A stretch of 64,000 nt of DNA from Tubulanus polymorphus (GCF_964204645.1 NC_134032.1:10714275-10778274); one strand, 5' to 3'. Positions 3,531 to 64,000 are shown, counted from the stretch's first letter. Translations and numbers: made by a program. Notes: generated by a model from the letters alone, not told the origin.

Positions 3531-3698
3531 CGCTATAAATCAAGCGAAAAACTCATTGACACCGGAAAGAAACGAGCGAATACCGTGAAACACCACCACC
3601 GGCCTCTACAGGCCAAAAACCACTGCAGCTTGCCTGACAACCGGGCGGCCGATTTATTACCACAACGGCGCTTTGAGCTCGTACGATAAAAACCGCGG

Positions 3699-3837: not shown

Positions 3838-4237
3838 TTGAAATAATTTTTTTGACATGATTTTCTTTTTAAGATAACATTGTTCGTTAAGACCCGACTT
3901 TTCAAACTGAATATAGATTTCACATACAAATTGACACTATTTAGTTTTAAATCTTTATCTTGGAATCTTCAAAACTACAATGACAAGCGTTTGGAAAGCG
4001 TTGGGTTCTAGTGGGCGCGGAGACTTGTGTCTGGGCTTGATATCGTCCTCGCCCAAGACACTTACATTTCGAAACGATATAAAACAACACAATCTTCGCT
4101 TTGAATACAAATGCATTTAATTTATTGACATTTAAAACGATTGTTTTAACTTGAATAAACAGGTAGAATTTATTTATATCATATTAAATCTGTTACGTGC
4201 ATTGAATAAACACATAAAACGAATGAAACGTTAAAAA

Positions 4238-19270: not shown

Positions 19271-22200
19271 TTACGCGTACGAGAATTCCGTGCGCCGGTC
19301 CATTTCGAATCCGTCGTATGCGTGCGCGTCGAATATGTTACTGTTGCTGTGAATATACGACGTTGGCGAGCGAGGCGGGTACGACCGTTCGGGCGGTCGC
19401 GGCGGTTCGCGTTTCTCGCGGCGGCTACGACGCACGAATAAACAGCACATGCACATCGCGATCGTCAGCAAAACGAACGTGCCGGCCGCGAGTACGTACG
19501 TCGTCATGTAGTACTCCTTCTCCAACATGGCCGCTTCCGGAATTATCCACTCTGAAATATAAGACGAAAACACAACGGCGAATTATAGCTATTTCAAATG
19601 ATTCCATGACAGGGCCATACGTATTGTTCACTCCTGGATATATGGAGTTTTAAGTTTTAAAAGAGAAAAATTTCAAATATCGAAGAAGCGTCTGCATCAC
19701 CTTTGTACCCTAATTACAATAGACTCCTTCTAAATCGGTACTGTTTATCTCAGTAAACCATTAATTCAGTGGTTTTAAGCTAATTTTTATCTTTTAGACT
19801 ACCTAAGCTCGGTTTTAATTCGGTAACCACCTAATAGGGTATTAACAAATCCAAACTGTACCAATAAAGGCATAGTTACTGTACAACCACAAAAAAATTA
19901 GACAAATCTAATTTCTTAACGCCTATGTCTCGAAAATGAAAGTTTTAAAGGAGCTACAGGCAATTTGCTCAAGAAAATTCGTTCAGAAGGAGTTTTTAAG
20001 GTATCCAGGAGGGATCTTGACAATTTAAATTTAACCATTCTGAGCTTGCGGTAAACTTGTTCACAAAACCAGACCCAGTCGAAACTCAATATTGGTACGT
20101 ACCATTATCGATGCGCGCGTAATGTCGAAAGTAATGGTTCCAAAATCCGTAGTAACTCTGTCGATATGCGATCTGATTGGTCAAATTCGGATAGCCGATG
20201 TTGATGTACGTCAAATTCTTCAAGTTGTACGAGTAGAAGTACGTTTCGTTCAATTTCTCGGGCGTCGGGTCCCACAGTTTCGAGAAGTTCGTCAACATGA
20301 ACATCATGTAGTTGCTGATGTTCTTGTCGAGGTCGGAGAAGTTCGTCTGGTGAACGAGTCCGAGGTCGTTCGTGTCGTTCCACAGCGTGTAGTTGAACCA
20401 CGGCGCTCCGTACAACCACGGTAACTCCTCGCCGGCATACGCGCCTTTAAAAAAGAGAAAGAATTTATTTATCAATTTGTCGAACAGGGTGGCCACATTC
20501 AGCCAATTTACAAATCCCTGTTTTCCTAAATCCGAGTTTTCCCTTATTTTTCAATGTGATCACGCAAAATTTCGTCCGTGAATCTGAGAAATTTCTAGGT
20601 TTAAAATGTTACGATTCATTCATTTTTCATTGAATCACGAATTGATATAGAAACAAGCAAATACTGCGCCTCTCAATTATTGTAAGCCTCCGAATTAGAA
20701 TTCATGTACATGTACCGCTTTTATGATTGACGACACACATCCTCGCTACAACAGGTAACACGTTATTAACCACAAACCGCTCTATTCGATATCATCATAA
20801 ACAGTTAGTTACTTACCCATCCATTCGGGATTCGTGCTGTTGCCCGAAACGTAGTCGAACACGTAGAAGTACGTGCGATTATCGAATCGAGCCTGATGTT
20901 TTAACGCCGCGTCGACGCAGCTACCATACTTCTTATCAGTCAACATCTATAAGCATACGTATAAAAGAATATTACGTTTCAGTTCTCTGTTTTTACTCAA
21001 TGAGGTTAAAACTTTAATAATAGCTATAGATATTGCGTAGTAAGGATTTGGTTCAGTTTCACGGTCGAATTTACAGATATAGGTAGCGATGGGAGGATGA
21101 GAAAGGAATAGAGATAAGAGATGAGAAGCGTGAGAGACGAGAGGGAGAGAGGTGGAAGGGAGATATAGGATGAAAAAGAAAGAGGGATGATGAAAGGGGA
21201 GATAGGTTGAGAAGGGGAGATATGGAGAGGGATGGAGAAAGGAGATGAGAGAGGGCAGAGATGGGACAGGGAGATTGAGAGGGAGAGATATGAGAGGGAT
21301 GGAGAAAGGAGAGAAGAATTGAGAAGGGACAGAGAGAGGTAGGTTGAGAGGGAGAGATGAAGGGAAAAGGAGAGAGGAAGGAGAAAGGAAGATAAAAGAG
21401 AGAGGAGGAGAGAGATAAGTGGAGAAAGAGCGAGATAGGAGGGAGGACACATGTTTTAACCATGTTTTAGCCACCCTAACTTCTGAATCTCTAAAATCTC
21501 ATCGATACTCACGTCGGTGAAGTTGAGCCGGCGTATCGTATCGTTGTGCGGATCGGGCCAGTACGTGTATTTATACTCTAACAGGTCTAACACCTCGTCG
21601 GTGTTCTCGATGCTCCACTCGTTCAGCAGTCGACGCGTGTGCTCGCGGAATCCTGCCTTCGTCAGGCCGTACGGCGAATCGCCGAGATACTTCGCTACAA
21701 ATGATAACATCTTCGTCAAATTTCATTAAAGGCGACCAGCACTCGGCAGACGGCGCAACAAAACACAGGGTTATTCGTGTAGTGAAAATCAGTTCATTTT
21801 CAATGAAATTTAATCGAAATTTTTCGGCAACCAAATTTTAAAATTATCAAACAAGTCCTCGAATAGATATAAAATTGACTTTCCCATTCAGTTTATGGTT
21901 AAGGTTTACTGGAAATTGATTTACTTATCGGAAAAGTTAACTCAATTTCATTGGAATATAGAAGGAATTGAAGCGCGGTAGCGGGTTATCGCTTGCCACA
22001 GTAGCATTGCTGTACCCCATTACAATACATTCTTCTCATTGTTAGATGAATTCATAATTAATATTTCAAAGGTGATATCTTTAAATTTTCTCAAATGAAA
22101 ATTGAGCCATCGTACAAATGAAAAGGATAGCATCGTACCACGGGGATGACAAGGTATTCATTAGTGGTAGCTGGTTGATGAAATTGACTTCAAAAAAGAT

Positions 22201-25200
22201 TGCGGAAAAACGCTGCCCTCAGCAAATACTATGCAAGAATTTCTGAAATATATTCCGGTAAGCGGAAAATCTATCGAGTTCTCAATAATGTTTCCGAACA
22301 GGGAAGTATCATTTCGAAAATTAAGTTTAAGATTTCGCGACGAATTACTCCGGTGGTTTTTACCTGCGAGTTGAGCAGCTCCGTATCGCGTTAATCCGGC
22401 CATGTAGGGAATCTTTTCGAAACGACCGTTCGCCCGCGCGTACCCCGGAGAGGTCGGCATGAATTCGTAGGACCCGTCCCAGACCGGAGTCCAAGCGAAA
22501 CCGCCGCGTCCATTCTGTAGAAAAAAAAATACGAGAAAAACGTTTAGTATCGAATAGACGGCTCTTCTCAAATCCGTGTTTACTAGATAGCACCGACATT
22601 CAGCAGTCAGCCTTCCATTCGACAAATATCCCAAACCGATTTCAAAAGTATCTGGATGAAGAATGCGAAGTAAAACTTGAGATTGGAGACTGTGACAGTG
22701 AAGATTATATAAAGGATAAAGTTAGTTTCTGTGGCCAGTTGCATAGTCGTGGCTTAGACTGAAGACCAGTCTAAGACCAACTTAGTTCTATAGGCAATCT
22801 AACAACTTAAGACCATTCTTAAGATTTAAGTCCACTTTTGGACTTAAGTCACGACTGTGCAACTGCCCCCTAGTGCCCCAATTAAATTAAGCCCTCTCCT
22901 GTCTGATGGAGGAACTACAGTTGGAAATCACCCCTGTTGATCTACCAAGGAGTGGATCCGGTAGCCGGATATTGCCCTCGACTAAAGATTTATGTTAACC
23001 CTTTCAGTGCTGGCTAATCAATACCCTATAGTGCTGAAGATAATTTGAAAATTCTGAAATATATCACCCTAGTGTGTTGAATAACGGGAATAGTACTCTA
23101 GTGCGTCTACACCCTGGTGCGGTATATCGTTAGTTACTAATATTTCACTATGTTTGACAGGTGCTGCCATCTTTCAAGAGAGATAATTAGTAATTACTAA
23201 TGTGTACTAGCAAAACCCATCACTGAGGTTTTTGGCATGGTTTCTATATCCGAGGAATTCCCTTCGTTTTTCTTAAGACCCAGGGGCCAGTTGCATAGTC
23301 ATGGCTTAGACTTAAGACCAGTCTAAGACCAACTTAGTTCTATAGCTAACCTAACAACTTAAGACAAGTCTTAAGATTTAAGACCACTTTTGGACTTAAG
23401 TCACGACTGTGCAACTGGCCCCTGCATACTAATTTTCTTCGACCCCTCGCTCAGCGGTCGTCACTTACCCCCGGTGATATTTTACTGCCAGCACTCAGTA
23501 TCTCGTCGACGGGTTTATCTCGTAGACAGCGTAACATCTCCCAGTGTTGCTCAGGCTTACACGGACAGTTCAACATACAGCCGAGTTGTTCGGCGTATTT
23601 CTCCGGCTTCCAGAACTGAGACGTGTACGAATTCTCGCATAAATCGGAACCGTCGATCGCGATAGCTGCTTGGAACAAACCTATAATCATAGATACATAC
23701 ATTTACAATGCAAGTTTCATCAGATTTGAGCACAGTTTTAGTAGATCATGCGAGCCAGATTTTAGTGGATTTGAGAAGATTTTAAGTTGATATGCGCTCA
23801 GTTTAGTTTTTAGGTACCCATATGGGTAATTAGAGCTCATGGCATTTTAGTTAATTTCAGTGAAGTTTAAGTGGATTTGAGTGAAGATTTAGATAAATAG
23901 AGCCTGTTTTGAGTTGATTTGAGACCAGTTCTTGGTCTTTGAGTGCAGTTTTAGATGATTTGAGCCATATTTTAGATGAATTGAGCTTAGTTTGATTGAA
24001 TTAAACAGGTCTAGTCGATTCAAGCCCAGTTTCTTGTTTAAGCTTTTTCTTTAAGTTCCCTTCAAATGGGGTAGTTTATCTAAGGCTATATCTTGTTTGT
24101 TTGAGCCTGGTTCTGGTTAATCTAAGCCCAGCTCTAGTTTAATTTAGCACAGTTCGAATGAGCTAAACTTGAGCTTGAGCTCACACCAGAGCTAATTCAT
24201 TATTTTTTTCCGGTCTCTTTTCAGGTTTTCATGATCACCCAGGGTGAACTTTGCATTTCGTGCATTATCGACAAGTGGTTGCAGCTCATTGAAACCGATA
24301 TATAATTCAATGTTCACGTCGCATTTCACAGCTTCGGCCATCTCTGAACTAGGGTCGAACTACAGCGACCTATTTTCGAACTTTAATGCAAACGAACTGA
24401 CATTCGATTTCAGTTAGTTCGCAAATAGTCGACTAACTCCGATATCCGAAGTTCGCGCTGGTTGATGAAGGATAACACTGTAAATCGTACCTCGACTACG
24501 CGAGCGCGGAGACACCATATGCAACCCGACGCTGATACCGCCGGCTTCGCTTCCCATGATCGTGATCTTCGTTTCGTCGGCTCGCAAGTATTCGGCGATG
24601 TCTCGTACGAACTCCAGCGCGGCGAGCTGATCCAATAATCCGAAATTACCCTTCGCGTTCTCGTCCTGCGTCGATAGGAAACCTGCGGGTGAAAAACAAT
24701 GAATTCATTAAATTTCCTAAGCTAATCAAAATCAGGTCTTTTCTATTTTTGTTATTAATTGTAAATCCTCTATTTTACTCCATTATAGCATAGAACGGTT
24801 GCAATGTAATAACAAACAAGGAAAAAATTCTTAATACGGACTTTCCTAAATTTACGTGATGGTCCATGGTAAATCCATACTATCAAAATAGGTATAACTA
24901 GAACCGAAGCATTTAAAATTCATTTAGATTTCATTATAGGCCTACTCGTTATTTTAAAGATTTAGAATATGCGCGCTTGCCGTTTGTGTTAATCACGGCA
25001 GCGCGTAGTTGCTAGAATCATTCGTAGTTTCTTGGAAAACTAGGCCGTGCAGGAGGCACGCTTTTCATGTACGCAGCTAGCAGTAGTGAATAGATACACC
25101 ACATAGCAGCCAGTCTGACACACGTGTGAAGCACGAATATACGTAACAACGAAGTGTTCTTCCAACAACAAATTAATATAACTAAAACCAGCAAATAAGG

Positions 25201-27657
25201 AACGCTTTGCGACGAAATTCAATAGGGTTAGAGATTTTACAACCGCAACTTCTGCATCGAATATGTTGAAAGTTCAGAAGAGAAACTAAGCCTGTTTCGA
25301 TAGTTATTTTGTACCAATGGAAGATAGTATCATACGTGATCTAGCAAAAATGGACTTGGCTCGAGGGGGTCCATAATACCTGTATTTGTTATCATATCTC
25401 CGTAGCGAATGTTTAGCCCGGGACCAAAGGCTTTCTTTGTAGGAGGTATTTAACTGAACACGCTTACCGTACGCGCTTATCAGCGACCCCGTGTTAGCGG
25501 TTAGTCGTACTGAAAGAGGTTTAAACACTCACCGAACGGGCCGAGTCTGTAGTTCACGGTGACCAGTATGACCTCGCGCGTCGCCAGGTAATATCCCGGG
25601 AAGAGCTGACCGCTTCCGTAGTTGAACTCGCCGCCGTGGAAATAAACGATGATCGGAAAACGAGGATTCACCGGGTGAAACGGATACTCACGAGTCGATA
25701 TCTACAAATAATGACATTCGATTTAATCGTAATCTAATCATTTTCTAAGCGCTGGAAAAAGAAAATGAAAATTCTATGGATCTGGGCCAAGGTTTACAAG
25801 AAAGATAAAACCTCAAGTTTTGAGTTTAATGTTTTTGGTTTCTTCAAGTTTTCGATGTGGACAACAATTCAAACACAATTGTTTCTTAACCCTTTCGGTG
25901 CTGACTAATAAACACCATAAAGTGCGGGAGATAATTTGAAAATGTTTGAATAAGTTCAGCCCAGTGCATCAAATAACAGGCATTCGCTAATAATGTATCG
26001 TATATATGTAACTACTGTAGGTGCTAACATCTTTCATTAGAGATAAAAATGTTTACGAATTACATCAATACACCGCAGTGCGGTGTACTAGCAAAGTCCA
26101 TCACCGTTTCATACACCGCAATGTGGTGTAGACGCACTGAACGGTTAACCTTAAATTTTTTCGCGAAGCTGGGCTCCCAAGAGTAAGGTTCAACTCAAAG
26201 AGTTTTAGTCGGTTCATTTTACTCCAGAAGCAAGTATTGTTGAATTAATATATGTCTGCGTAATGCAGTGAGTATCAATAAAAGATGATTTTTCATTTTC
26301 ATAATATAGGAGATTCCGTTCGAGTCGATATCCCTTTAACTGAGATGTTTGTTAAAATATTTTTCATGGCACTATCTATGAAATACATTAAAGCTAATTC
26401 AGTAGCATTCAATTCAGAAATTTTTACAGTCCAATAAGATCCAACTTGAGCGGAGTCTACGGTACATTTGTCGGCTAGGTATGTCTTAATATGCTCAATT
26501 TAATGCAAACGCATATTACAAAATGCTTCCTTATTAATGAAAGAGTTGCTTTGAATGGTGTGTGAAACGGAAGCGTACTTACATTCGGTTGAAATATGTT
26601 CAAATAAAGACAATCTTCGCTGATGTTGACTTTGTTGATGAGATGCTTTTGAAGATACGCCGGATCCTGAGGACACGCCGGCGGCCATTTCTTCGCTTGC
26701 CAGGGCCGGTACCATCTCGTCTTGGCAGGAGGCTGGCGAAAAAAGGACTAAGTTAGTGAACCATTATCATTAGTTCGACAATTTGTCAGCAACAATGAAA
26801 ATGGGGTACCAGAAATATACCAGTTTTCACAACAGGTGATACGTAAACCTGGACCAACCAACCAGTAAAATGACCTGGTGGCACTTAACTTGCTACGGGT
26901 ATCCTCAATTGCCACATGTATGTCATACTACACACTAGCGACACCTGGTGGATCCTCACTTGCCACAAGTGGAATCCTCTATAAGCGCAGTAGTTGATGT
27001 CCAACTGCACACTAGCGACACCTGGTGGATCCTCACTTGCCACAAGTGGAATCCTCTGTAAGCGCAGTAGTTGATGTCCTACTGCACACTAGCGACACCT
27101 AAGGTATCCTCACTTGCCACAAGTGGAATCCTCTATTGCCGCAGCAGGTGATGTTTACTGCAACACCTGGTGAATCATCAATACCACAGTAGTCAATAGC
27201 CTATACTTCTACGTGCTAGCAAACCTGGTGGATCCTCACTTACCACAAGTGGAATCATTTCCACAGTTAAATTGTCGATACTAGATTTCCCAAATAAGCA
27301 ACTTACCCTAAATCTGTAGTATCCAATAGGTGGCATCGCGTACGGAACGCCGAGGTACGTATTGACCCGAGTGTGTGGGTGTCCGACGTTTACCGTGTAC
27401 CCGTGAATATCGCCGTACTCCGTTACGACCGACATGTGATTATAATTCGAATTTGGATTGTACAGAAAGTTCACGTCGCCTTTTCCCCAGTCGAGCCAAT
27501 TCTGCCACATGCTACCCACATCCATTTTATCGCCCGGACGCCACGGCCTCAAATCGGGATTCTGTATTTTTGGATCCCACGGGTTCCAGATGTTGTCCTC
27601 TTGCGAAGCTACGCCCGCAATCAAGCACGCGGTATATAAAATAACAGCGCGCAGCAT
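19271..27657 (-). CDS. Neuroligin-like non-catalytic type-B carboxylesterase (cholinesterase-like adhesion molecule), 10 coding exons, 719 aa, type I membrane protein
   Basis: Exons 27657-27307, 26732-26583, 25701-25533, 24682-24491, 23680-23469, 22514-22364, 21694-21513, 20946-20817, 20444-20103, 19551-19271. All are GT-AG and phase-consistent, totalling 2160 nt. Motifs: YLGVPYAMPPIGYYRF, SEDCLYLNIF, YFHGGEF, VTVNYRLGPFGFL, GNFGLLDQ, GSEAG, WTPVWDG, TYFYVF. Signal peptide and a C-terminal TM helix. Confidence 0.92.
21090..21450. repeat. GA-rich low-complexity tract in a neuroligin-like intron
   Basis: Nearly pure purine tract on +; explains three overlapping spurious Leu/Ser/Pro ORFs. Confidence 0.9.
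22733..22870. mobile_element. MITE, GGCCAGTTGCATAGTC family (sister of 23281-23424)
   Basis: ggccagttgcatagtcgtggcttagact ... aagtcacgactgtgcaactgccccc; nearly identical to the copy at 23281. Confidence 0.8.
23281..23424. mobile_element. 144-bp MITE with TIRs caggggccagttgca / tgcaactggcccctg
   Basis: Perfect 15-bp TIRs. Related ends at about 12318, 18455, 39196-39320 and 41415, and tandemly amplified internal pieces at 46560-47000. Confidence 0.85.
25887..26148. mobile_element. Non-autonomous piggyBac-like element (TTAA-CCCT ends)
   Basis: ttaaccctttcggtgc ... gcactgaacggttaa. Related pieces at about 22995-23225, 55645-55720 and 57020-57043 (gcactgaaagggttaa). Confidence 0.65.
26890..27260. 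repeat. 77-bp-unit minisatellite in the first coding intron of the neuroligin-like gene
   Basis: cacactagcgacacctggtggatcctcacttgccacaagtggaatc recurs at 26931, 27008 and 27085, plus degenerate copies. Confidence 0.9.
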
Positions 27658-28115
27658 TTTCTATTCTTTCTTCGGTCCTGATTAAGAAAAATATCATAAA
27701 TTGTAATAGAAAATTTCAGGATGAACTCGGTTAGTGGGTTAGAATTGGGAGAGCCAATGTTTTGAGCTGAACGCGATGATTCACTACACTGATTACTGTT
27801 AATTCTGAATTCCAGAGGTTTCGCCCATTCAGCTTGCAAACCAGATGAAACTATACAATACAAATTGAATTACGTTCACTGTTTTTAGCTCAACGCAGAC
27901 TTCTGTCGTCAAATTTTGAATGCACACAAGATTAAATCATTCATACCAATCATTTAGATGGCTGGCTTTCAGATAATTTGTTTTCTGACACAAATTAGTG
28001 CAAATCAATATTAAATGTATCTTCGTACAAATTAGATCTAATGCTACGACGGTTTAAATATGGATAATTGTTTTCAGAAATCTGCTGCGGACCAACCAGA
28101 TCGTTTGAAAACACG

Positions 28116-29102
28116 ATGAACGAATCGCGAATTTATTTTTATGATCCGTTAGCGGAGGTCGCGTGGTACAGGATAACGTACATCACACCTCCGCTAGTCA
28201 TAGTCGGCGTTACGTTCAACGCGATGGTTATCGTCGTATTTCACAAACTGAAAACTAAAAACCGCTGCTTCGATTTACTGAAATACCTCGCACTCGTCGA
28301 CATTATGTTTTTGCTGGCAATGTTCATTTTATTCTCAGTTCGTTATTACATTCACTACGCGTGGTATGGCGAATCTATCAAGAAATTTCCTAATTACCGA
28401 ATTTCCCCGATATACATAAGCATATGGGGAAGTATGTTTTATAAAGGATTTCTGGTGCTTCGCAATTATTTGACCGTCATCATTCAATGTGAAAGATTGG
28501 TAACTATCAGTTTTCCGCTACACGCAAAACGTAGCTTGAAGCCACTTGTCATTATAACGGGTACATTATCGATGTCTATAAGCGCTTACTACCCTATTAC
28601 GATGAGGATAACATCGTCGAGTAGTTACAAAGAGTTTCAATTTGTTCATTATCTATCTCACACTCCCGGGGGCTATGAAACAGTTTACAAAATAATGAAT
28701 AAATACGTTGATCCAATCATTCGCGTTATTACTTCAAATATTCTAATTTTCGTGGCGAAAATAGCTCTCGTCATTGTTTTGTACGTCAAACGTAAACAAC
28801 GCAAAACCTTGTCGGCGTCGAAAATCTCGACGTCTCAAAATCAAACGAAAGCCACAAAGATGGTGCTGTCAATGAGTTTCGTATTCACTATACTAGAATT
28901 TCCAGGTTTCTACGGTAAGATCGGCGGAAAGGACGCGGGTTCTATATTTTACAAAGACGATTCGGTGCATATTTACCAGATCTCGTCGATTTTCAATTCG
29001 TCAGTAAATTTCGTTCTGTATATAATCGTAAACAAACAATTCAGAAACACCTTGTTGCATTTGTTTAAAATCAATCGAGACATCACAGAAAATTCAACGT
29101 GA
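28116..29102 (+). CDS. Intronless class A GPCR, FMRFamide-receptor-like, paralogous to 9001-10086
   Basis: First ATG at 28116 (MNESRIYF). TM1 GVTFN, TM2 LALVD, TM3 QCERLVTISFPL, TM6 FTILEFP, TM7 NSSVNFVLY, helix-8 QFR. Confidence 0.9.
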   Translation: MNESRIYFYDPLAEVAWYRITYITPPLVIVGVTFNAMVIVVFHKLKTKNRCFDLLKYLALVDIMFLLAMFILFSVRYYIHYAWYGESIKKFPNYRISPIYISIWGSMFYKGFLVLRNYLTVIIQCERLVTISFPLHAKRSLKPLVIITGTLSMSISAYYPITMRITSSSSYKEFQFVHYLSHTPGGYETVYKIMNKYVDPIIRVITSNILIFVAKIALVIVLYVKRKQRKTLSASKISTSQNQTKATKMVLSMSFVFTILEFPGFYGKIGGKDAGSIFYKDDSVHIYQISSIFNSSVNFVLYIIVNKQFRNTLLHLFKINRDITENST

Positions 29103-30805: not shown

Positions 30806-31217
30806 CTGTCTGTCACACCTGCTCTCCGTGCGACGTTTTGGTCCGTTATTTCGTTAATAATCGGTTTATCTACCTTTATTACGCATCAATTTGTTCAGTG
30901 AGGAATTTGCATTCAGAAATAAACAACAATTTTTACTAAAGTTGTTTTTGTTTTCATTTATGAGCGATAGTTTACTCAGCATACGCTCGCGTAATGCTGA
31001 AAAATCTGCTCCGCGGACGCTCGGAAACGTTACGGTGACGTCATCACCTGCTCATTAGCATATAAAAATACAGTAGGTGGCGCCACGTGACGGGCCATAA
31101 AAGCTGTTTTTCAGCATAACGCGAGCGTATGCTAGGTAAACTATCGCTGTTAGATGAAAACTCAAACAAATTTATAACGGACCAAAACGTCGCACGAAGA
31201 GCAGGTGTGACAGACAG
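30806..31217. mobile_element. MITE with ~44-bp TIRs and TA flanks (Tc1/mariner-like)
   Basis: ta|ctgtctgtcacacctgctctccgtgcgacgttttggtccgttat ... ataacggaccaaaacgtcgcacgaagagcaggtgtgacagacag|ta; a second internal inverted repeat at about 30975-31135. Confidence 0.85.
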
Positions 31218-50240: not shown

Positions 50241-52545
50241 GGCCTTATCACGAGTTATCGGCATTTCAGCGCTAAATAGAATTTTACTTTGAAATTTTTC
50301 CCCGGCCTTACCACCGGGAGTTCTTTGAAAGAACGGTTATTTTAGCGCCAATTCTGGTGGGAATTCTACCCAGTTCTCAAGTTCTACAATAGAATTGCCT
50401 TCGTCATAATACCGCGGCAGTACACACCTGAATTCATGTTCGATGAAGTGGAAAATCTACAGACGAAATAATGTCATTATGCTTAATGCAAAAATAATCA
50501 TCATTAAATTTAGGTACTGCATCAATCTGCAGCCAGATCCAGCATCCTCTCGAACACAATCGAAAGGATGCTTTGACAACATCTTTCTAATATTTCGATC
50601 GCGCCCCGCCTTCACAGAGGAGCTTCAAATATGTCGCCAGCAAGAAAGACGCGGGGTTACAGATTACAAATTACATGAAAATCATTTAGTTCATATATAA
50701 GACGGTGTCCACTTTGATGTCACCTTATGTGGGATACCTTCGTGGACTTCACCCCCCCCCCCCCCGACATTTCTTTTCGAAAATAAACTAAAATTCTCGA
50801 CCTTAAATAAATGATTTATCATTTCCCTTTCAATAAGACTTCACGATGGGTTCAGTATTTCTGCCAAGAAATTTTCGATCGAACATGAACTACGAACGCC
50901 AGGCGCGGGCATTCGTGTTCACTTTTCGTCCGTTCGTTCGTCTGCCCATAGACGGAATCCATTATTCTGGGGGAAGCTTTGAAGAAGCTTCGATGGATTG
51001 TCTAGATACTTGTTTTAAACATCTTATCAGTAGCACACTCCCCATATCAGCGCACTCCCATGTTATCGCCCAATGCTTCACTCACCCTCGGGTTGGCCTA
51101 CAGAGCGGAGTTCTCCGACCCTCTCGCTTCAGTATCATCCTGTAGTACAGAAAGGTCAAGATATGAAAATCGTTTAAGAATATGTGAATTACTGAAAGAA
51201 ATGTTTCGGGAGCGGCATCAATTCAGGCATTCACTCGAGACATTTCGATGTTGACAATATGGACAATAAACTACAAACATTTGCCACATTTCATTTGTAG
51301 GTTGTTACTTAAATACATTCATAGGTATTATTTCAATTATGCTACGTGTAAATGCTACCCTAAATATCACACGATACGAACTGTTAACTTAAGGTTTTTT
51401 CACACTAATCACACCGGTGATGTCGTCTGCGATTGTGATCACAGTCTAAGTACACGATATCATGTCGCGCGGTGCGATTAAAGGTTTTACACGCATTACG
51501 CAAATCTTATTTTAATGACATTTCTCATTCACAAAACCTGCCCTACCGGGACAATGATGCAATGTCAGCGTTTGTTTATTTTTGTTATTAATTGTTTATC
51601 TTGACAATGCCACCGACGTTTTTATTTAAATTTTTTAATTTTCTTGTCTGGCAAAAATCCATATGGAATTGTTCCAAAATGACGAAATTGAAGGCTGTTT
51701 AGTACAAATGTCACATAAAAGTGAACACTCTCCCCTCGGCGAGTGAACTCCTGCCCCCTCACAGCTACAGCATGTTCTCCGTGAGTCGGCCAGTCGTTGC
51801 GTTGGTGGTTGACAAAACTATTTGTGAAATTCTACTGAATTCATGGAGAGAAATTTAACAATCATTAGTTTAGTTGCCGATAGGTTGATCATCTGCTGCT
51901 GGTAACGCAATTAACGTAATTGACAGATCCAATGATAATCTTTGTGCTACCTACGAGCTGAGATGATTGTTAGTGGGTGCAAGTGGCCACTGACTTTTCT
52001 AGGATTTCTCAAGTCTAATTGGGCCTCAATTCAATCAGTTAGTTCTTTCTTTGCATTCCTTTCAGGTTCGACTGGTTTTGGCTGTTGCTAGCGTGTTACT
52101 GTTTCTCGAATCAACAAGTTCACGCCATTTGAGATCCAAACATGGGCATTTATTACGTCATCAAGAAGAGCTATGTTTCCACCCACCAGGCCTACGGGGC
52201 ACTAAATCCGGAGATAGAAAATTCCAATGTCCGCCTTACTACCCGTTCGACTTGGACACGGCCCCTCAAGACCAGCGGTCAATCTGCCAATCCTACTGCG
52301 TCAAGTCGATGAACGTCGAAGGCCGATACCCGAAAAAACTCACCGAATACAGATGTAAAGACTGTTCGAACCGATGCAGCGGAACTGAATGCGAGTGCGA
52401 AGAGGTCAAATACCCGGTACCAATCTGGACGGTGGTTCTTGATGAAAATCGTAATTTTGCTGGATATGAATTGAGTTATAGATCTGTATCGGTCGGCTGT
52501 ATGCCGGCGCGCCCGACTTTCAGTCGTTATTTCGACGACTATTAG
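49850..52545 (+). CDS. Interleukin-17 family cytokine, 2 exons, 164 aa
   Basis: Exon 1 49850-49864 (MMMLP|gtaagt) and exon 2 52066-52545 (ttcag|VRLVLAVASVLLFLESTSS..., completing a signal peptide). IL-17 signature RSIC...RYPKKLTEYRC..C...C...CEEVKYPVPIW...VSVGC. Confidence 0.85.
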
Positions 52546-53101: not shown

Positions 53102-54965
53102 TTACTTCCCGGGAACTGGGCACGGAGGCTTCGGCGGCATCGGAGGACATGTCAACGTGGCCGCGATCGTTTTCGCCAGAAAATGCTCGACGTTGACCCA
53201 ATCTTTAATTTCGAAGTAGTTTTCGTTCACCGGACGACTGACAACTTTCTTCAACTGCGCCCTGAATTCCGGCAGTTTTGCTCCGACCCCGACCCCGATG
53301 AGACGGGTGTTGGGGCTTCGTAGTTTCTTCGCCTGTTCGAGCAACAAGCCTTCTACGATATTAACCAACTGATCCCCTTTGAAAATTTCGCCGTCAGTTA
53401 TCAATACGACCGTGTTGTTTACGTCTGGGCGACTTTTCGGCAACATCTGAAAATGAATGAAAATATTGCACATTTAGTCAGGCGAGGGAATCTCGAGGAA
53501 GAATGGCGAAGCTAGTTCACACATCCACCATTCGGGGGCACCACGTGATGGTCAAGATCTTATTGAAATTAACCTACGTATCTCCTCCGACATGTACTAC
53601 CAGGGTTTGGTTGCATCACACGCCAACACAGGGCAAAGGCAACCAAACCCTGGCAAGCGAGGATGCCAGATCATGCGATAATAACTAAATTGTTTATTCA
53701 ATCATAGAATTGTGATAAAATGTACATTTATCAGTACTAAGGTCAGCGATGGACCTCAAGAAATTCAGCGAATTGAAATGGTTCTTTTTAGAAATGTCTG
53801 AATTAACTTCTTCTTCGGATTCTGATTGATAACTGATGAGTCTGACGTAACTCTGGTACTGAGGTAGCATGTGGGCTTAGGTGGTGGGCCATGATCAATA
53901 TTCACCTTTTCTCGGACATTCTTCAGCGCTGTATCTGTATGCGTCTGGCCGTGGTTAATGATTGCGGTGTCGATTTTAGTCACGATATTTTCGACGTCTT
54001 GTGTCGTTTGCAACTCGGTCATTTGTTGAACTATGAGCTGTTCATCAGCTCCCGAAAACATGTACACCCCCACCTGAACAAAAAAACAATTTACACTATT
54101 AATATGGAAATACCGTATGGATAAGATATTCTATCCACTATTTAGAACCCGTGTGAACAGGTTGTTTCGGGCCCAATTAAGCCCGGACCAACGCGGCTAT
54201 TCATGAATCATTACTATTCTATATTCGGCCATTTTTTCTTACATTGTAAATTGCCGGACTATTGCCAACGGGAAGCGCCAAGCCTTTGACGATGTCTTCC
54301 GCCGCTCTCCTTACAGTCGGTATGTGATTTGGCCCTTGGTTATTTATTCCGTTTTCCAAACTCCCGCTCTGGTCCAGCACGAGAACAACATCGTTCTGTC
54401 TCAAACACACTAGACATTTGATAAAATCGTTTGACTATTCTAAAACTTGAAAAATTCAATAGATTGGCGATGTATTAATTAAGTTCTGGCTAAGCTTACT
54501 AATATGTACTGCTTTAGAAAACAAGAACAGGTTGGTATCAATTAAGTAAAGCATTGATACCTATCATTATATCTTATCAACCTCTAGATAACATTCAACC
54601 TTTTTCCAATGGGCCTTTATGGCACTGTTCAGGCCCCTATCATCAATCTACTAATTCTGTCATGTACCGCAATGTTGTATTATATCTAACGGGGTAATAA
54701 TGATGAAATAAGTATATTAATTCATTCCCTTTTGAACGACATAATAATTCAATAAGTATTCATAGCACTGAACGCCTTGTTAGTACATAAGTTTGGAGCC
54801 TTGTTTTACCATGACCGGGAAAAGTATAGAAGCTAACACTGCTTACAAAAATAAACAAGTTCTACCTGGTACTGAGTCTGATAAGACGGGAGGTTCCATC
54901 ATTGCTGCTACCGGCCCGAACACGAACGCGACTCCCAATAGCATCCCGTAGAAGATTACAGTCAT
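53102..54965 (-). CDS. Secreted single von Willebrand factor A (VWA) domain protein, 4 coding exons, 259 aa
   Basis: Exons 54965-54866 (signal peptide), 54409-54243, 54073-53906, 53446-53102; phase-consistent, 780 nt. Complete MIDAS: DVVLVLDQSGS, GQTHT, VLITDG. AATAAA at 53036-53031, 5' UTR donor at 55184, TATAAATA at about 55266-55259. Confidence 0.88.
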
Positions 54966-55141
54966 TTTCAGCTGAATGTGAAATAATATTAATAGAAATA
55001 AATTGAATAAAACAAGTTTCAGAAGAAAATAGCGTGAATACCTCAACCGCCCGACTGCAACACCACCTTTTAGGAAAGACCTGCAGACGTAGATAATTTG
55101 CTGCTTCAAATAAGACGCAGGGAATTATGATAAGGTTAACG

Positions 55142-55169
55142 CTTGGAGTAATCAATTGATTACTCCAAG
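55142..55169. mobile_element. 28-bp perfect palindrome flanked by a 7-bp direct repeat (gttaacg)
   Basis: gttaacg|cttggagtaatcaattgattactccaag|gttaacg. Confidence 0.75.
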
Positions 55170-55861
55170 GTTAACGCTACTTACCTTTGATTTACAGCAC
55201 AAATACAGGCTTTGTTACTAAAACAATAGTTGATGCCTGGACCGGGGAAATATGGTGTTATTTATACCAAACGAATAGCTGCCGGGTGTTTTTCGATTGG
55301 TTTCTGATGGCTCAACGTGAGATCAGGTTTTCAATTTCTTCCCCGCTAAAAATTCACGTAAATATTTTCGAAATATATCTTAAATATTCCTTTCAAATTT
55401 ATTTTTCGCAAAGCCCATAGACCGAGCTATCACTAATACATATATAACCCTAACCCACAGCAAGACGGTTCACCCGAAACATGAAACAGAAACGCAGGGT
55501 TGTTTCGTCTGTTCGTGCTTCGGAGCAACGCGCGCAAAAAGCCAAAAAATCGTCTTTTATGTTTCGCGTTAGTGTTAGTAATTATTCGAAACATTTTGAC
55601 AAATACCACCCCGTGTGTGTAAAAGCGAGCATACCGCTGTAGTATGTCTACGCCGCGATGCGGTGTATCGTTAGTTACTAATATTCACCGTTTGACAGGT
55701 GCTGCCATCTTTCATTCGAGAAAGAACATAATACAGCCGAAAAGCAGCAATAACGGGTTCTCTTGTTCTTATTCTTCTTTGGATACTGTGTCGTACAGTG
55801 TCGACCACGATCGCGTGTATACTGACACAGCCGCACCATGCTATTGAAAATGAAGGGAACT

Positions 55862-57717: not shown

Positions 57718-58680
57718 ATTAGATACAAGTCCCACAATCACGAAGCCGAAAACGTAAAATATCGTACGTCGAACGTAAAATATCGTACGTCGAAATTTAT
57801 CATCAAAATTTCCAGTTTTCAACTAACTGGTTTTTTTAGTTGAGGGTTTATTATCAATTTGGTCCAGTTTGGATTACGTCTTGGCGCTTCTCACATCTCT
57901 GCTCACACCCACTATGAATAATTAACCAGGTTAAAATCAAATACCGAATAGTTTACACCGAATATACCGAATACCGAACGAGGCTGACTTTCTGACGGAG
58001 TTGAAAAACGAAGTCCGAAATTGTTTCCTAGAGCTTGTAGATTATTCTACTCTACGTTTCCACGATAATCTAACAATCATCTTCAGTATTCGTGAAGATG
58101 AATATTAGAATAAAGTGGAAACGTCGAATAAACTACCATCTCTCGGAAACGATTTCGGACTTTGTTTTTTCGTCATCATCATTTGATTCTGTCCACATCA
58201 TCCTCACAATACGGATATAGTGTTTTATCATTGGTGATTAGCAATTTAATGCTCATGCTATGCACGATCATGCATAAAACTCAAAAGCTCTGGGCATTTT
58301 GTCAGCATGAGTGAAATTAAATTCATGCATACAAGTAAATGAAGTTATCATGACAATGTCGTGAGTGATCTTGATCTAATTTCCCAAAAAAACATGGGCA
58401 CAGTGGTACTTTCCAGTGACGGATCCAGGAATAGGGGGCCAAGTCCAAGCCTAGTTGTATACTTGGTACACGAAGTGCAGGAATATTTTGGAGGGGGAGG
58501 GCTTCAAGATTTTGAAAACATGCATCATTTTCTGGGCATCTAGAGTAATTCTAGAAAGAAATAACCAGCAATGATTTGCCACTGTATGTGGTACTTTCGT
58601 TAGCCAGGTTGTGAAAATGTAATTTTGGCAATATATACATTTCCTAGGATCCACCCCTGCTTTCTAAGACCATAATCTAC

Positions 58681-58848
58681 CTGTTCTCGGACATTCTTCA
58701 GCGCTGTATCTGTATCTGGCTGGCCGTGGTGAATTTTTGTATTTCGGATTTCATTTACGATATCTTTAGACGCTTGCATCGTTTGCAACTCGATCATTTG
58801 TTGAGCTATGAGCTGTTCAGCAACTCCCGAAAACATGTACACCCCGAC
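58681..58848 (-). pseudogene. Orphan duplicate of VWA-gene coding exon 3
   Basis: 168-nt open exon with intact AG and GT (VGVYMFSGVAEQLIAQQM...TDTALKNVREQ), paralogous to 54073-53906 including ~60-70 nt of upstream intron. No sister exons found nearby. Confidence 0.8.
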
Positions 58849-59929
58849 CTGAACAAAAAAACAACAATTTAGTACATTATTGATATGGAAATACCGTAAG
58901 AATATGATATTCTATACACTTCTACCTAAAAGATGATTTAGAAAAAAAATCTCAAATGCATTTATCGGTAAGCTTATATTCATTCAAAATTATTCAACAC
59001 GTCTCCAATTCATTGGCTTCATCCATGGAGCCTAACTCTTCTAAGTCTTCACTCCTCCTTCCAGTGCGCCCAACATATTTCTGTCTCCAACGCATCACTT
59101 CCGCCAACCGGAAACACGGGATGGGGATGCCTTCAGAGGGCCTAATCTCGCCAGCTCCACTTCCCTATTACATCCTGCTGAACGTAAGGAATGTAAAAAG
59201 ATGCAATATACACACAACAACAAAAACAATTTTCGTTAATTCAATTTTAACAATCTTTTTATTTGCGCTCATAAAATATACTGTCGAAATTGCACACGAT
59301 TTTCTATTTGTACGTTAAAACCTATCTATCTATATATCCATAATGTATATTTATATACATATATATTTATAATGTGTATTTACACCATAAACACTTTGTA
59401 TTACGTATAAAATAATGTAAATAGTGATCTACTTTTTTCTTAACCAAACGATGATTCAATAAGAAACACAAACCACAAAACGAGGAAGGGTCTTTCGTTT
59501 TATATAATAAAATCAGGGATTGCTTGATAAAATGAAAAAGATTTCTGGGCCTATTATTCAGAGTTTCTTGACTCCTCTTCAAACTCGAATACCTTCGAGT
59601 CAAATTATTGCTTAAAATTCCTTACAACCATCGTTGATAGGATTTTTACATTACATATCATCAAAAATTCATGAATTTTTTTTATATGAAATGTCATGAA
59701 AAAAAAACGTTCAGCAGTAAAATTTACGAATCCAATTGTCTCGACTAAGAAAACCAGAACCTAATTATATCAGAGTAAGTTATTCAAAAGTTTAAAAAAG
59801 ACGTATAGGCACAATGTTTGTGCTGTGAGAAAGTGAATTAAATGAAAGCGAATAAATTATTCAAAATTTGGAGTTCAGCCGATTCTGATATAGTTTTCAT
59901 GCCCGATATGTAAAGCCCAACAAACATAA

Positions 59930-60330
59930 CGCAGGGAAACAAAGGAATACAGAATCAAACATGTTTTATCTCTCGGAAACATCGTTCCCCAAAAAAATGT
60001 TTCTCGTTTCTCATAAATGCACACGAATAGGGAAACGCTCGGATACATGTTTCTGTCTCCATGTTTCCCTGCATCGTGTGCGTTGGGTTTCAGAAACAAT
60101 GAAAGGCTAACAACGTCTCTCGTAAACCCACACAAAGCAAGGATACGCTCGGAAACATGTTTTTCTCTTATGTTTCCATGTTTTCCTGCATCACATGCGT
60201 TTGGTTTTAGAGGCGAGAATAAAAGACTTCCAATGTCTCTCATAAACGGACACAAAGCAGTGAAACGCTCGGAAAAATGTTTCTGTCTCCTGTTTTTATG
60301 TTTCCCTACGTCGTGTGCTTTTGGCTTTCC
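59930..60330. repeat. ~110-120-bp degenerate tandem repeat downstream of the homeobox stop
   Basis: ctcggaaacatgttt...catgtttcc.tgcatc.tgtgcgtt recurs 3-4 times. Confidence 0.8.
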
Positions 60331-60353
60331 TCTCCCTTTGGAACCAGAAAAAT

Positions 60354-61374
60354 TTACATCGTCGGCCGCAGTTGTTCCGTTTCCTTTTTCCACTTCGAAC
60401 GTCTGTTCTGGAACCAAATTTTGATGACTTTCTCCGACAGGCCGAGTCGATTGACCAGTTCCTCGCGTCGACCGGCGTCGCCTAGATACATATTCATGCG
60501 GAACTCGTATTCGAGAGTTTGTATCTGGTAATTGCTAAAATTCGTACGCGGACTACGGAAACTATGACCGACGCCGACACCTGCGAAAGCGGCAGCGGGA
60601 CTGCTGAATGCCGCCGCGCCACCGACTCCTCCGGACGACTCAACTACAAAAAAGAAAATGTTACAATTAGTGGGAAATTTAGAGATATAACAAGGTGGTA
60701 GCCTGAGACTCAAGTGTCGCAGCTAAGTCAGATTTGGCATGAAGTTGATAAAGTTCATTATTTCCCCAGTCATTTAGCTTCGATCTGTTAAATTTCAACT
60801 CAAAACTGTAGAATTTGTTCCAATTTGCCGATTGCGCAGTCGAGACTTAAATCCAAACAGGATTAAAATTTTCTAGACTTGGTCTTGGCCAACCAGGCAA
60901 GGATATTTTCTTGCAGGGATCAGCACGGTGAAATTATAGTAGGATGGTTTACCCTCATCTATGCTATGACCTAAAAACATTTTTCGCTCAAATGCCAAGT
61001 ACTCTGCCAAGTGCTTTCAGGATTATACCCAACTAAGCACTAATCAGGGCCGGAATCCAAAATCTGTTCAAAAGTAAGTACTTTTTTCGGACTTTGTCAG
61101 ACTCGCTACGAACCCTGCTTACTCAATTCAATTTCTCAATCGAGTTAGACCCCAGGTTAAAGTTAATACCAGTCTATAAAACCGGACTTCCTAGATGATA
61201 TTTCAAACTAACCCGGTTCGGGAGAGTAGTCGTCGTCTTCGCCTTCAGGGTCATAGTTCGGGTCTTCCTCGTATTTTTTCTTCCTCTTATTACTGGCTTG
61301 TTGTTGTTGTTGTGTCGAAAACGGGCGACCACTGAACCGTCTCTCGTATCTATCGTAATGCTGATAAAAATCAC
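60354..61374 (-). CDS. Homeodomain-encoding 3' cassette (2 exons; 5' part of gene outside window)
   Basis: Exon 61374-61213 (162 nt, phase 1 to 1: DFYQHYDRYERRFSGRPFSTQQQQQASNKRKKKYEEDPNYDPEGEDDDYSPEP) joins exon 60643-60354 (phase 1: ...FRSPRTNFSNYQIQTLEYEFRMNMYLGDAGRREELVNRLGLSEKVIKIWFQNRRSKWKKE...*). Confidence 0.85.
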
Positions 61375-62134
61375 CTGCAATTTAAAATCACGTATTTTCT
61401 AAATCTGATGACTCTGCACAAGTACGCCAGGGGTTAGAACTCCAGAAAACTTTCATTTGTTCTCTCTAATTCGAACTTAGTTTAATTCGAAAGGGAAAAT
61501 ATGGACTGTTTTATAGGCGAGTTATGCCTTAAACCCAAGGGTTTATCTAATTGATTATGAATTGAATAAACCCCCCAGGTTAAAGGCTAAAATGGTCTGT
61601 AAAACCACACCAGCAAATTTCTATAAATAGCTTCATGGGATGGAGAGATCCATACCTCCTCCAGGCACTACCCAGAATGTCCATTTGCGCAACAATTGCT
61701 CATCATTTGGTCCATCTCTTGTGGAATTGAACCCATCCTCCTTACCCAAATCAAACTCATATAATCAGGTATCACTCAAACACAGAAAACACAATGGAAT
61801 AAGTCGAGGCAAACTTGATTTATTCAACTCAGAATCTGTACAGGTTCCTGAAGTTCATTGATCTAATGGAAGCTTCAAAGCGTTTATTAAAAGGGACTTG
61901 GTTGATAACATATCCATCGCAATATTGTACTATTGACTTGGTCATAATTGACCCATCACAGCAGTTGATGAGATAATTTTAGGATCTACGATTCCTTAGA
62001 CTTTTTTTTAGAAAAGCAGTATATTACAGTAGGTCAAAAATTATATCCAATCAAGTCATCAGACTGTCGGCGGCTGACAACTCCCACAGTCTGAAAGGTT
62101 GATGGCGATGTGACACTATGAACACACCCTCAGA

Positions 62135-62292
62135 GAGTCCATACATATCCTTGGAGACCCAATACATCCTCAAAGACTCCAAACACACCCTCAGAGAGTC
62201 CCAACACACCCCCAGAGAATCCCAACACATCCTTAGCGTCCCAATGCATCCTCAAAGACTCCACACACACCCTCAAAGAGTCCCGCCAACAC
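62135..62292. repeat. Degenerate ~21-bp tandem repeat (cacaccctcagagagtccc)
   Basis: About 7 copies directly after the zinc-finger stop codon. Confidence 0.75.
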
Positions 62293-62296
62293 ATCT

Positions 62297-62580
62297 TTAC
62301 AGTCCGAGATTCATAGTTTTCAGTTCGTCGAGAATCTGCGAATGGTTTCGTCTCATGTGAGCTTTAAGCGTATCGAGTCGCGTGTACTGAGTAGCGCAGA
62401 TCGCGCATTTGAACGCTTTACCCATCTGCACGTGTTGTACGAGCACGTGGCGTTTTAAATTGAAATTGTTCGCGCACACTTTATTGCACAGATGACACAC
62501 GAACTTATCCACTCCGCCGCCGCCGTTGTTGTCGTCATGGAAATGACCTTGAAGTGGAGCGAATGGATTAAGAAGGTCAC
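62297..62580 (-). CDS. Terminal exon encoding a C2H2 zinc-finger pair (alternative last exon)
   Basis: Acceptor cattccag| at 62580, phase 1, 284 nt to stop: FVCHLCNKVCANNFNLKRHVLVQH-VQMGKAFKCAICATQYTRLDTLKAHMRRNH. Confidence 0.85.
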
Positions 62581-63407
62581 CTGGAATGACAAGGAAGAGA
62601 TAAATTTAGAAGAAAACAACAACGGCTTTTATTGTCTGCTCGCAATGGAAAGGGTTAACGATCAATAGACATTTTCAATATTCGAAAACTCTCAATACAT
62701 TTGCTTCATTCTTTTGTAATTCCAGGTGACCTTCTAGTGTTGCTAGGATTTAGAATAGGCTAAAACAATTTGACTACTGGAGGTAGTTGCCCAGTAGCAT
62801 CAGAGAAAACCCTCAATTCACTAATGTACCTAAATCCAACACTCTCAGATGAAAATGATACTAAGAAGGATGACTGTTCCGTATACACCATGCACCTGAA
62901 CCTGTGCTGTAAGTCTGGTGTTTTGTCGGTCAAGAGATATTTCGGACAAGATTTTGTGCTCTAAATTCTATCCACAGAAGTTCAAGAAGTTGAAAAGACA
63001 ACAAATGAAAACAGAACGACACAATTTAGGAAAAATGATATAAAAATTTTGATTATTATTATTGGGCGAATAGTTTTTACAAGTAAAATTATTTTTCGGA
63101 GAATGACACGATTTAAACTTTATCGATATAGAATTTTCATCATTATTAGTCTCAAAGTTTTACAAATACAACAGCTTAATTTGGATGACCAGGGACTGCC
63201 CAGATATCTTTGAATTGATTAAAATGCGAAAATAAGATAATAATAGTTTACACGGTTCCAGGTTAAATGGACCAAATATTTCATCCGAATTAAGTAAAAA
63301 TCCGGATTAAAAAATTTGAATCAAGCAAGTTCAACAACTGTACAACTGTCATTCTTCGGTGGATATTCATTTCGTTTTCGATTACGGAGTCTTTTTCGAT
63401 CGTTCGT

Positions 63408-63880
63408 TCAATTTTGAAAGTTGTGCATTCCGACGAGCGGAGGAACGGCAGGCGGAGGATGCTTCGAATCGACGTGCGTTTTGAGGTTATCCGACCGCGA
63501 GAAACTACGCTCGCAAAACCGGCACTGATATCGCGTTTTGTCGAACATGTGAACGCCGGCGACGTGTCGATTCAGATTGAACAATTTACTGAACAATTTA
63601 TTACAAATCCGACAACGGAATCGCTTCAGGGCCGGCGGCGCTCCTCGACGACCGTCGCCGAACACCGGCGATCTGATGAACTCGACTTTATATAAAGATA
63701 AGTCCGACGACGTCGACGCAGCGGTCGGCGGATCGAGGCGACCGCGCTCGACGGGATTCTGTAACGCCTCGTACGGATCCGGCGCGCACCGATGACTCAT
63801 CGTCAAAGAATCTTCGTCCTTGTAATCCGTAGTTTCCAGATAAATGTCTGCGTTGTTGCCATGGTGATTGGCTCTCAGTC
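63408..63880 (-). CDS. Terminal exon encoding a second C2H2 zinc-finger pair (alternative last exon)
   Basis: Acceptor tttttcag| at 63880, phase 1, 473 nt open to stop: FRCRICNKLFSKLFNLNRHVAGVH-MFDKTRYQCRFCERSFSRSDNLKTHVDSKH. Confidence 0.87.
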
Positions 63881-64000
63881 CTGAAAAATGTCATATGGAA
63901 ACTACGGATTACTGAAATGCGTATGGCTGCGTGTATTCACTACGTGCATTAGGAAAAATAAAACATTACATGTGTATGAATATAGAAGATGGCTGTCTCT

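What the first reader, a model, noticed from the sequence alone, without database searches (positions are those of the whole stretch)
60354..63880. Array of alternative last exons that swaps DNA-binding domains: two C2H2 pairs plus a homeodomain
Seen: three consecutive minus-strand cassettes (63880-63408, 62580-62297, 61374-61213+60643-60354). Each begins at a canonical AG in the same phase (1), has no convincing start or promoter of its own, and ends in its own stop. Established: Drosophila lola, broad, fruitless, tramtrack and mod(mdg4) splice a constant BTB N-terminus to one of many terminal exons, and paired C2H2 fingers with HxxxxH ends resemble the broad/ttk type. Inference: this is the distal end of such an array in what appears to be a non-insect invertebrate, with the constant exons beyond 64 kb. 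Unusually, the repertoire includes a homeodomain, so one locus would yield transcription factors of different structural classes. I know of no described zinc-finger/homeodomain-switching array.
Basis: partly seen in the sequence, partly recalled or inferred. Interest (0 to 1): 0.9.

Follow-up and report, generated by a model that had tools for sequence, protein, structure and literature searches.

The report
Worm gene with finger-or-homeodomain endings
In a ribbon worm, the far end of a row of interchangeable gene endings holds two zinc-finger endings and one homeodomain ending, so one gene probably makes DNA-binding proteins of two different folds; the splice itself was not seen here, and a planktonic arthropod gene turns out to make the same swap.

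Summary
The three cassettes lie exactly at the stated coordinates: phase-1 acceptors, own stops, two C2H2 pairs and an intact but orphan ANTP-type homeodomain (at most 60% identical to anything found). The second finger exon and the homeobox cassette have no usable start codon, so they need upstream exons. The genome is GCA_964204645.2 (Tubulanus polymorphus per earlier scan notes and my recall). This scan already noted BTB-less zinc-finger end-exon arrays elsewhere in this genome, and a neighbouring-window note puts at least nine finger exons and the shared head 13-20 kb beyond this window; I could not fetch that DNA. One run that looks like RNA covers all three cassettes and skips introns, but no junction was seen. 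Both finger acceptors are masked by strong hairpins; the element masking exon 2 can also pair with the homeobox acceptor. The 'no precedent' claim needs correcting: two plankton transcripts share one BTB head (99.3% over 748 nt) and diverge at a phase-1 junction into C2H2 or homeodomain tails. I found no paper on either case. Verdict: probable (about 0.68) lola-like array that captured a homeobox; new variant of a known kind.

The parts
63408..63880 (-). C1: terminal exon, phase-1 acceptor, 156 aa, C2H2 pair at 63614-63549 and 63524-63459, TGA
   Evidence: 5 of 6 allelic changes synonymous; covered 63374-63833 by RNA-like run X4
63822..63912 (-). Hairpin over the C1 acceptor: intronic arm 63912-63893 (branch-point/pyrimidine zone) pairs with exonic arm 63841-63822; the AG is looped out
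   Evidence: I12, 20 nt, 95%; -34 kcal/mol, z -6.4; reached by 4 of 200 control sites
62297..62580 (-). C2: terminal exon, phase-1 acceptor, 93 aa, C2H2 pair at 62497-62432 and 62407-62342, TAA; no Met before the first finger; paralogue of C1 (FNLxRH in finger 1, RxD in finger 2)
   Evidence: X4 contig 62074-62556
62714..62735 (-). Intronic element E: pairs over the C2 acceptor (62592-62571, 21 of 22, -33.3 kcal/mol) and can also pair over the C3a acceptor (-20.1)
   Evidence: (I7)
62121..62284 (-). 21-nt tandem repeat in the presumed C2 3' UTR; holds the only ATG plus phase-1 donor-like sites between the cassettes
61883..61888 (-). AATAAA, candidate polyadenylation signal for C2 (a second at 61824; one at 62633 could serve C1)
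   Evidence: use not shown
61213..61374 (-). C3a: first exon of the homeobox cassette, phase 1 in and out, 53 codons, no Met, KRKKK and acidic stretch; begins G-D-F, like the G-D-L of C2
60644..61212 (-). GT-AG intron (569 nt) inside the homeobox cassette; phase 1 at both ends
   Evidence: splicing not observed
60354..60643 (-). C3b: terminal homeobox exon; divergent ANTP-type Q50 homeodomain (about 60557-60375) with a one-residue insertion before helix 2; first Met lies inside the domain
59513..60353 (-). Presumed 3' UTR of the homeobox ending (includes a 120-nt dispersed repeat at 60054-60318)
   Evidence: X4 contigs 59513-59819, 59873-60131, 60196-60443; RNA nature of X4 inferred

Best explanation
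This is the distal end of one nemertean transcription-factor gene built like fly lola: shared 5' exons (beyond the window, probably with a non-BTB head) end in a phase-1 donor that is spliced to exactly one of a row of terminal cassettes, each with its own stop and poly(A) site. Most cassettes give a two-finger C2H2 reader; the last gives an NLS-bearing linker plus a homeodomain, so the same head is aimed at DNA either by zinc fingers or by a helix-turn-helix. The homeobox was probably captured at the end of the array, with C3a perhaps a relic start of a duplicated finger cassette. Hairpins that mask the proximal acceptors would let the spliceosome pass on to distal cassettes. Shown: anatomy, domains, phases, missing start codons, predicted hairpins. 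Inferred: shared donor, joining of the homeobox to it, RNA nature of run X4, any role of the hairpins, the capture history.
For: Same strand, same phase, 0.8-0.9 kb spacing, own stops. No Met before the domain in C2 or C3a/C3b, and no ATG-plus-phase-1-donor exon in any gap except inside the repeat in the C2 3' UTR. Run X4 covers the exons and the stretch after each stop but is empty in 9 of 10 unique intron bins (the tenth is spill-over) that sister runs X2 and X3 cover in 10 and 8. The homeodomain is an orphan, at most 60% identical, unlike a conserved stand-alone developmental gene. C2 and C3a acceptor regions share 13 of 22 nt (1 of 52 controls reach that) and one element pairs with both. 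Transcript-level precedent of the swap on a BTB head: L004 and L005. Unchecked scan notes of the next window: at least nine finger exons and a shared head.
Against: No splice junction, loose end or full-length protein links any cassette to upstream exons. DNA beyond 64000 could not be fetched. X4 is not on record as RNA and does not cover C3a or the 5' half of C3b (holes in all runs). The homeobox acceptors carry no strong local hairpin, unlike the finger acceptors. The homeobox cassette has two exons, the finger cassettes one. The C2/C3a likeness is post hoc (5.7% of control pairs reach it).
Confidence: 0.68

Rival explanations
1. The finger cassettes are alternative last exons of one gene, but the homeobox is a separate gene parked at the end of the array, with its own first exon hidden in an upstream intron or in the tandem repeat of the C2 3' UTR.
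For: Two-exon structure and no strong acceptor hairpin. ATGs at 62294-62146 are followed by phase-1 donor-like sites (score 3.3-3.5, as good as the C3a donor at 3.6). The next-window note counts only finger exons. Phase match has a 1 in 3 chance.
Against: Its promoter would have to sit inside the C2 exon or UTR or among finger cassettes; X4 reads the C2 exon and repeat as one unbranched contig to 62074; orphan homeodomain; C3a begins like C2.
Confidence: 0.2
2. The homeobox cassette is joined to the shared head by trans-splicing from its own short transcript, as for mod(mdg4) and partly lola; the protein outcome is the same but the route differs.
For: Known for both fly loci (PMC4667647, PMC13490949).
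Against: All cassettes lie on one strand within about 25 kb, none inverted; cis splicing needs nothing extra; mod(mdg4)-like genes are cis-spliced outside flies and moths (PMC4667647).
Confidence: 0.06
3. The cassettes are last exons of separate tandem genes or leftovers, with no shared head.
For: C1 has an in-frame ATG and could encode a 130-aa two-finger protein; no annotated full-length product was found.
Against: C2 and C3 have no start; the gaps of 0.8-0.9 kb hold no first exons; frames are intact and C1 variation is mostly synonymous.
Confidence: 0.06

Closest known systems
Drosophila lola (also broad, fruitless, tramtrack)
   Same: Constant N-terminal part plus mutually exclusive terminal exons, most with one or two C2H2 fingers (17 of 20 lola isoforms, PMC11426971); C2 matches the tramtrack finger pair 2DRP at E 6e-6, though CTCF and ZBTB7A fingers score higher.
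   Different: Host is a nemertean; tramtrack-type BTB was not found outside arthropods (PMC11426971); no homeodomain ending is mentioned for the fly loci in the papers read.
Drosophila mod(mdg4)
   Same: Many variable 3' exons on one head; not all carry the same domain (FLYWCH in 26 of 31 isoforms, PMC4667647; BED-type endings from my own memory).
   Different: FLYWCH rather than classical C2H2; trans-spliced with some exons on the opposite strand; no homeodomain reported.
Unnamed BTB gene of a marine planktonic arthropod (contigs Ga0314690_10151922 and Ga0314669_10069586; copepod-like by my judgement)
   Same: One head, 99.3% identical over 748 nt, diverging at a phase-1 junction into a C2H2 tail or a homeodomain tail. 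Further BTB-plus-homeodomain genes.
   Different: BTB head; its homeodomains do not group with the window's (weak tree), so capture looks independent; evidence is two assembled contigs from different samples, organism unnamed.
Sea-urchin Cmp/Cmpl locus
   Same: Shared N-terminal part with mutually exclusive 3' exon sets that change DNA binding (PMC3784565).
   Different: Swaps homeodomain for homeodomain; two endings only; Compass head.
Drosophila PGRP-LC, CG42235 and pipe 3' variable regions
   Same: Competing RNA pairings steer the choice among 3' cassettes (PMC6191721).
   Different: There a docking site pairs with selectors to activate a 3' site and mask a 5' site; here predicted stems cover the 3' sites themselves, untested.
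ZF-class homeobox genes (Zfhx, Zeb, Tshz)
   Same: C2H2 fingers and homeodomains at one locus (PMC4901127).
   Different: They carry both in one polypeptide; here each finger exon ends in a stop and has no internal donor, so the domains exclude each other.

Membership tests
lola/broad-type BTB-ZF loci (tramtrack group) | N-terminal tramtrack-type BTB domain in constant exons | not testable with these tools
   Constant exons lie beyond 64000 and could not be fetched; PMC11426971 finds the domain only in arthropods; unchecked note s1-508847 reports a non-BTB 51-aa module
lola/broad-type BTB-ZF loci (tramtrack group) | Row of same-phase terminal exons, each with its own stop | tested here: met
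   three cassettes, all phase 1
lola/broad-type BTB-ZF loci (tramtrack group) | One or two C2H2 fingers per variable exon | tested here: met
   met for C1 and C2; the third cassette has a homeodomain instead
lola/broad-type BTB-ZF loci (tramtrack group) | One donor shown spliced to several terminal exons | tested here: inconclusive
   no joints or informative loose ends; only assembled contigs available
mod(mdg4) | FLYWCH domains in most variable exons | tested here: not met
   no FLYWCH hit; zf-BED hits overlap the stronger C2H2 hits
mod(mdg4) | Trans-splicing, variable exons on both strands | tested here: inconclusive
   All cassettes in the window are on one strand; allele-phased reads not available
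ANTP-class homeobox | Homeodomain with WFQNRR in helix 3 (Q50) and three helices | tested here: met
   one extra residue before helix 2
Named ANTP family (Hox, Vax, NK, En, Dlx) | Supported grouping with a family and high identity to orthologues | tested here: not met
   in no starred set, best identity 60%
ZF-class homeobox (Zfhx/Zeb) | Fingers and homeodomain in one reading frame | tested here: not met
   stops end both finger exons, no internal donors scoring 2 or more
RNA-pairing-controlled 3' variable regions (PGRP-LC type) | One element able to pair with several cassettes, conserved across species and shown by compensatory mutation | tested here: inconclusive
   element E pairs with C2 and C3a acceptors in prediction only; no second species, no experiment

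The most novel reading that the evidence does not exclude
A lineage-specific, BTB-less transcription-factor gene switches its DNA-binding fold (C2H2 pair or homeodomain) by last-exon choice, and the choice between the last finger exon and the homeobox is set by one intronic RNA element that masks either acceptor; together with the arthropod BTB case this would be a convergent, undescribed route by which switchable-tail genes recruit homeoboxes.
Probability: 0.2. Interest if true: 0.8.

Novelty: new variant of a known kind. Interest (0 to 1): 0.6.

Why it matters
Homeobox genes are catalogued as stand-alone genes with a small set of partner domains (PMC4901127 never mentions BTB). If homeodomains can be plugged in as optional last exons of lola-like loci, then one protein head, with its partners and expression pattern, can be sent to homeodomain sites or to zinc-finger sites by splicing alone, and homeobox counts in invertebrate genomes miss or misplace such orphans. 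Seeing the design in a nemertean without BTB and in a planktonic arthropod with BTB suggests it arose at least twice. The acceptor-masking stems give a compact, mutable handle on how one of many last exons is chosen, which is still poorly understood for lola-type loci.

Tried and rejected
Fetching DNA beyond 64000 failed: no full-length product with a C1, C2 or homeobox tail came up in three homologue searches (by exon; searches used alignments headed by a longer natural homologue, which let candidates up to about 507 aa be seen) or among 50% representatives. These blanks say nothing about longer products. Following the operators' note I searched exon by exon by reference and left out the joined step: no C3a+C3b model and no joined model of the neighbouring vWA gene (which might have served as an anchor for flanking DNA) was built or searched. 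Read laying gave no splice joints; the 2015 RNA run X5 laid nothing. The bacterial promoter scan is irrelevant for an animal and was ignored. Strong local hairpins at the two homeobox acceptors: rejected (about 20% of controls score as well). Inverted repeat I11 between C3a and C3b (76%): not pursued. The ORF 60417-59875 is a repeat-derived frame with no Pfam hit. The C2H2-like match at 58639 sits in AT-rich intergenic DNA next to a duplicated vWA exon fragment; not counted as a cassette. Recursive splicing at the AG/GT starts of C2 and C3a: considered, no evidence, and AG/GT is common at exon starts. Literature searches for finger/homeodomain switching or BTB-homeodomain isoforms found nothing relevant; the library lacks most subscription papers.

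Full report
Observation. All coordinates check out on the minus strand. C1 (63880-63408) and C2 (62580-62297) each begin after a YAG at frame offset 2 (phase 1), encode a pair of C2H2 fingers ending HxxxxH (Pfam E 1.5e-9 and 4.5e-10) and end in a stop. The third cassette has a 162-nt exon C3a (61374-61213, phase 1 in and out, GT donor) and a terminal exon C3b (60643-60354) with a homeodomain (E 2e-21). C1 and C2 are paralogues by their recognition helices (FNLxRH; RxD). In a second animal five of six differences in C1 are synonymous, so the frame is under selection. No further domain-bearing cassette follows; downstream lie a vWA gene and an IL-17-like gene.

Source. An 831-aa single-exon protein of the window maps to GCA_964204645.2, record OZ123233.1, 16.7 Mb. 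The tool printed no species name; earlier scan notes and my own recall give the ribbon worm Tubulanus polymorphus (Palaeonemertea). Those notes (AI notes, unchecked) describe many BTB-less 'shared head plus finger end-exon' genes in this genome and, for this very locus, at least nine finger exons running to about 77 kb and a 51-aa head at about 82.7 kb in window coordinates. So the finger array is a repeat sighting for the scan; the homeobox ending is what is particular here, and none of the notes returned mentions one.

Does the homeobox belong to the array? It cannot stand alone as seen: C3a has no Met, and the first Met of C3b is inside the homeodomain. C2 likewise has no Met before its first finger; C1 has one (63800). 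Between the cassettes the only ATG followed by a phase-1 donor-like site lies in a 21-nt tandem repeat just after the C2 stop; these sites score as well as the real C3a donor, so this escape is not closed by sequence alone. The homeodomain is an ANTP-type Q50 domain with one inserted residue, at most 60% identical to any protein found and in no supported group (42 rows, 61 columns, bootstrap unsettled), which fits lineage-specific capture better than a conserved patterning gene. A single-sequence model gives three helices at low confidence (pLDDT 57).

Expression. No run is on record as RNA. Of four runs laid on 59201-64000, X2 and X3 cover introns and exons alike. X4, from the same sample, covers C1 (63374-63833), C2 and the stretch after it (62074-62556) and the homeobox 3' end with about 850 nt after it (59513-60443), yet is empty in 9 of 10 unique intron bins, the tenth being spill-over; X2 covers 10 and X3 8 of them. 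I infer that X4 is poly(A) RNA and that all three endings are transcribed. No contig crossed an acceptor, so no junction was seen; C3a and the 5' half of C3b are holes in every run.

RNA structure. A 17-bp stem pairs the branch-point zone of C1 with its coding sequence and loops out the AG (z -6.4); a 21-of-22 stem covers the C2 acceptor (z -3.9 for the region). Among 200 acceptor-like control sites in the window 4 score as high, one of them the mirror of the C2 stem. Both stems were noted earlier by the scan and hold up. The homeobox acceptors have no comparable local stem. New here: the element that covers C2 (62735-62714, -33.3 kcal/mol) also pairs across the C3a acceptor (-20.1), better than any of 426 unrelated control sites (best -19.0), because C2 and C3a start alike (13 of 22 nt; G-D-L and G-D-F). 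This is post hoc and modest (5.7% of control pairs are as alike). It hints that C3a descends from a finger-cassette start and allows a competing-mask model, in the spirit of the pairings shown for Drosophila PGRP-LC (PMC6191721), but nothing here tests it.

Precedent. The homeodomain search returned BTB-plus-homeodomain proteins from plankton (P0183, P0184, P0186). A scan with that BTB head gave 32 loci. Two, L004 and L005, are 99.3% identical over 748 nt and part exactly at a phase-1 point after AAG: L004 goes on to C2H2 fingers, L005 to a homeodomain. A genomic contig, L025, has a BTB part followed by two homeobox exons. Since tramtrack-type BTB is arthropod-specific (PMC11426971), these come from an arthropod, copepod-like by my judgement. 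Caveat: assembled contigs of different samples, no reads checked. Their homeodomains do not group with the window's. I found no paper that describes it in either lineage. Known neighbours are lola (finger for finger), mod(mdg4) (mostly FLYWCH, PMC4667647) and sea-urchin Cmp/Cmpl (homeodomain for homeodomain, PMC3784565).

Mechanism and odds. Best reading (0.68): one gene, one phase-1 donor, one last cassette per transcript, the most distal being the homeobox; acceptor-masking stems may weaken proximal sites so that distal ones get used. Rivals: separate homeobox gene at the array's end (0.2), trans-splicing (0.06), unrelated tandem genes (0.06). It works like lola; it is not filed as a lola-family member, because the BTB head could not be tested and is unlikely in this phylum.

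Limits. DNA beyond 64000 and full-length products were out of reach. The decisive datum, a read from the shared donor to 61374 or 60643, is missing. Interest 0.6: a real, probably undescribed twist on a known design, seen convergently, but resting on anatomy rather than a junction.

Noticed in passing
L004 1-1090 and L005 1-1468: Two plankton metatranscriptome contigs share a BTB head and switch between C2H2 and homeodomain tails at a phase-1 junction; I found no description in the papers searched.
   Followed up: yes
L025 887-3800; L010; L034-L038: Genomic BTB genes of planktonic arthropods followed directly by homeobox exons; L025 has two homeobox exons in a row, possibly alternative ends. 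At least two unrelated homeodomain types occur on BTB heads.
   Followed up: partly
L017, L021, L026, L027: BTB followed by several C2H2 pairs in different frames: further lola-like end-exon arrays in plankton contigs.
   Followed up: no
window 58779-58920 vs 54004-54139: Duplicated copy (88-94%) of a vWA-gene exon and its acceptor about 4.8 kb upstream of the vWA gene itself; looks like a stranded exon duplicate.
   Followed up: no
window 53102-55260 (-): Small secreted vWA-domain gene with a TATA-like box near 55260, a 5' UTR exon and a Pro/Cys-rich tail.
   Followed up: no
window 52066-52545 (+): IL-17-like exon (Pfam IL17 E 0.002, below the curated cut-off); signal-peptide start lies in an upstream exon.
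   Followed up: no
window 19271-27657 (-): Neuroligin-like carboxylesterase-family gene with a transmembrane tail (COesterase hits).
   Followed up: no
window 28068-29102 (+) and 9001-10086 (-): Two intronless rhodopsin-type GPCRs; the one at 28-29 kb lies antisense between the esterase gene and an armadillo-repeat gene.
   Followed up: no
window about 33.6-44.3 kb (-): Armadillo-repeat gene with an N-terminal Cys-Cys motif, Vac8-like by my recall.
   Followed up: no
window 4238-6733 (-): Intronless 831-aa multi-pass membrane protein, DUF8415 only.
   Followed up: no
window 58004-58169, 3590-3840, 30970-31140: Long inverted repeats (47 nt and more), probably MITE-like elements; they account for the high-scoring controls in the hairpin test.
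   Followed up: no
window 61136-61185, 63174-63310, 60000-60330: High-copy dispersed repeats (summed depth in the hundreds to thousands in all runs), one just inside the C3a-C3b intron.
   Followed up: no
window 59646-59650: 331-nt insertion allele in run X4 within the presumed homeobox 3' UTR.
   Followed up: no
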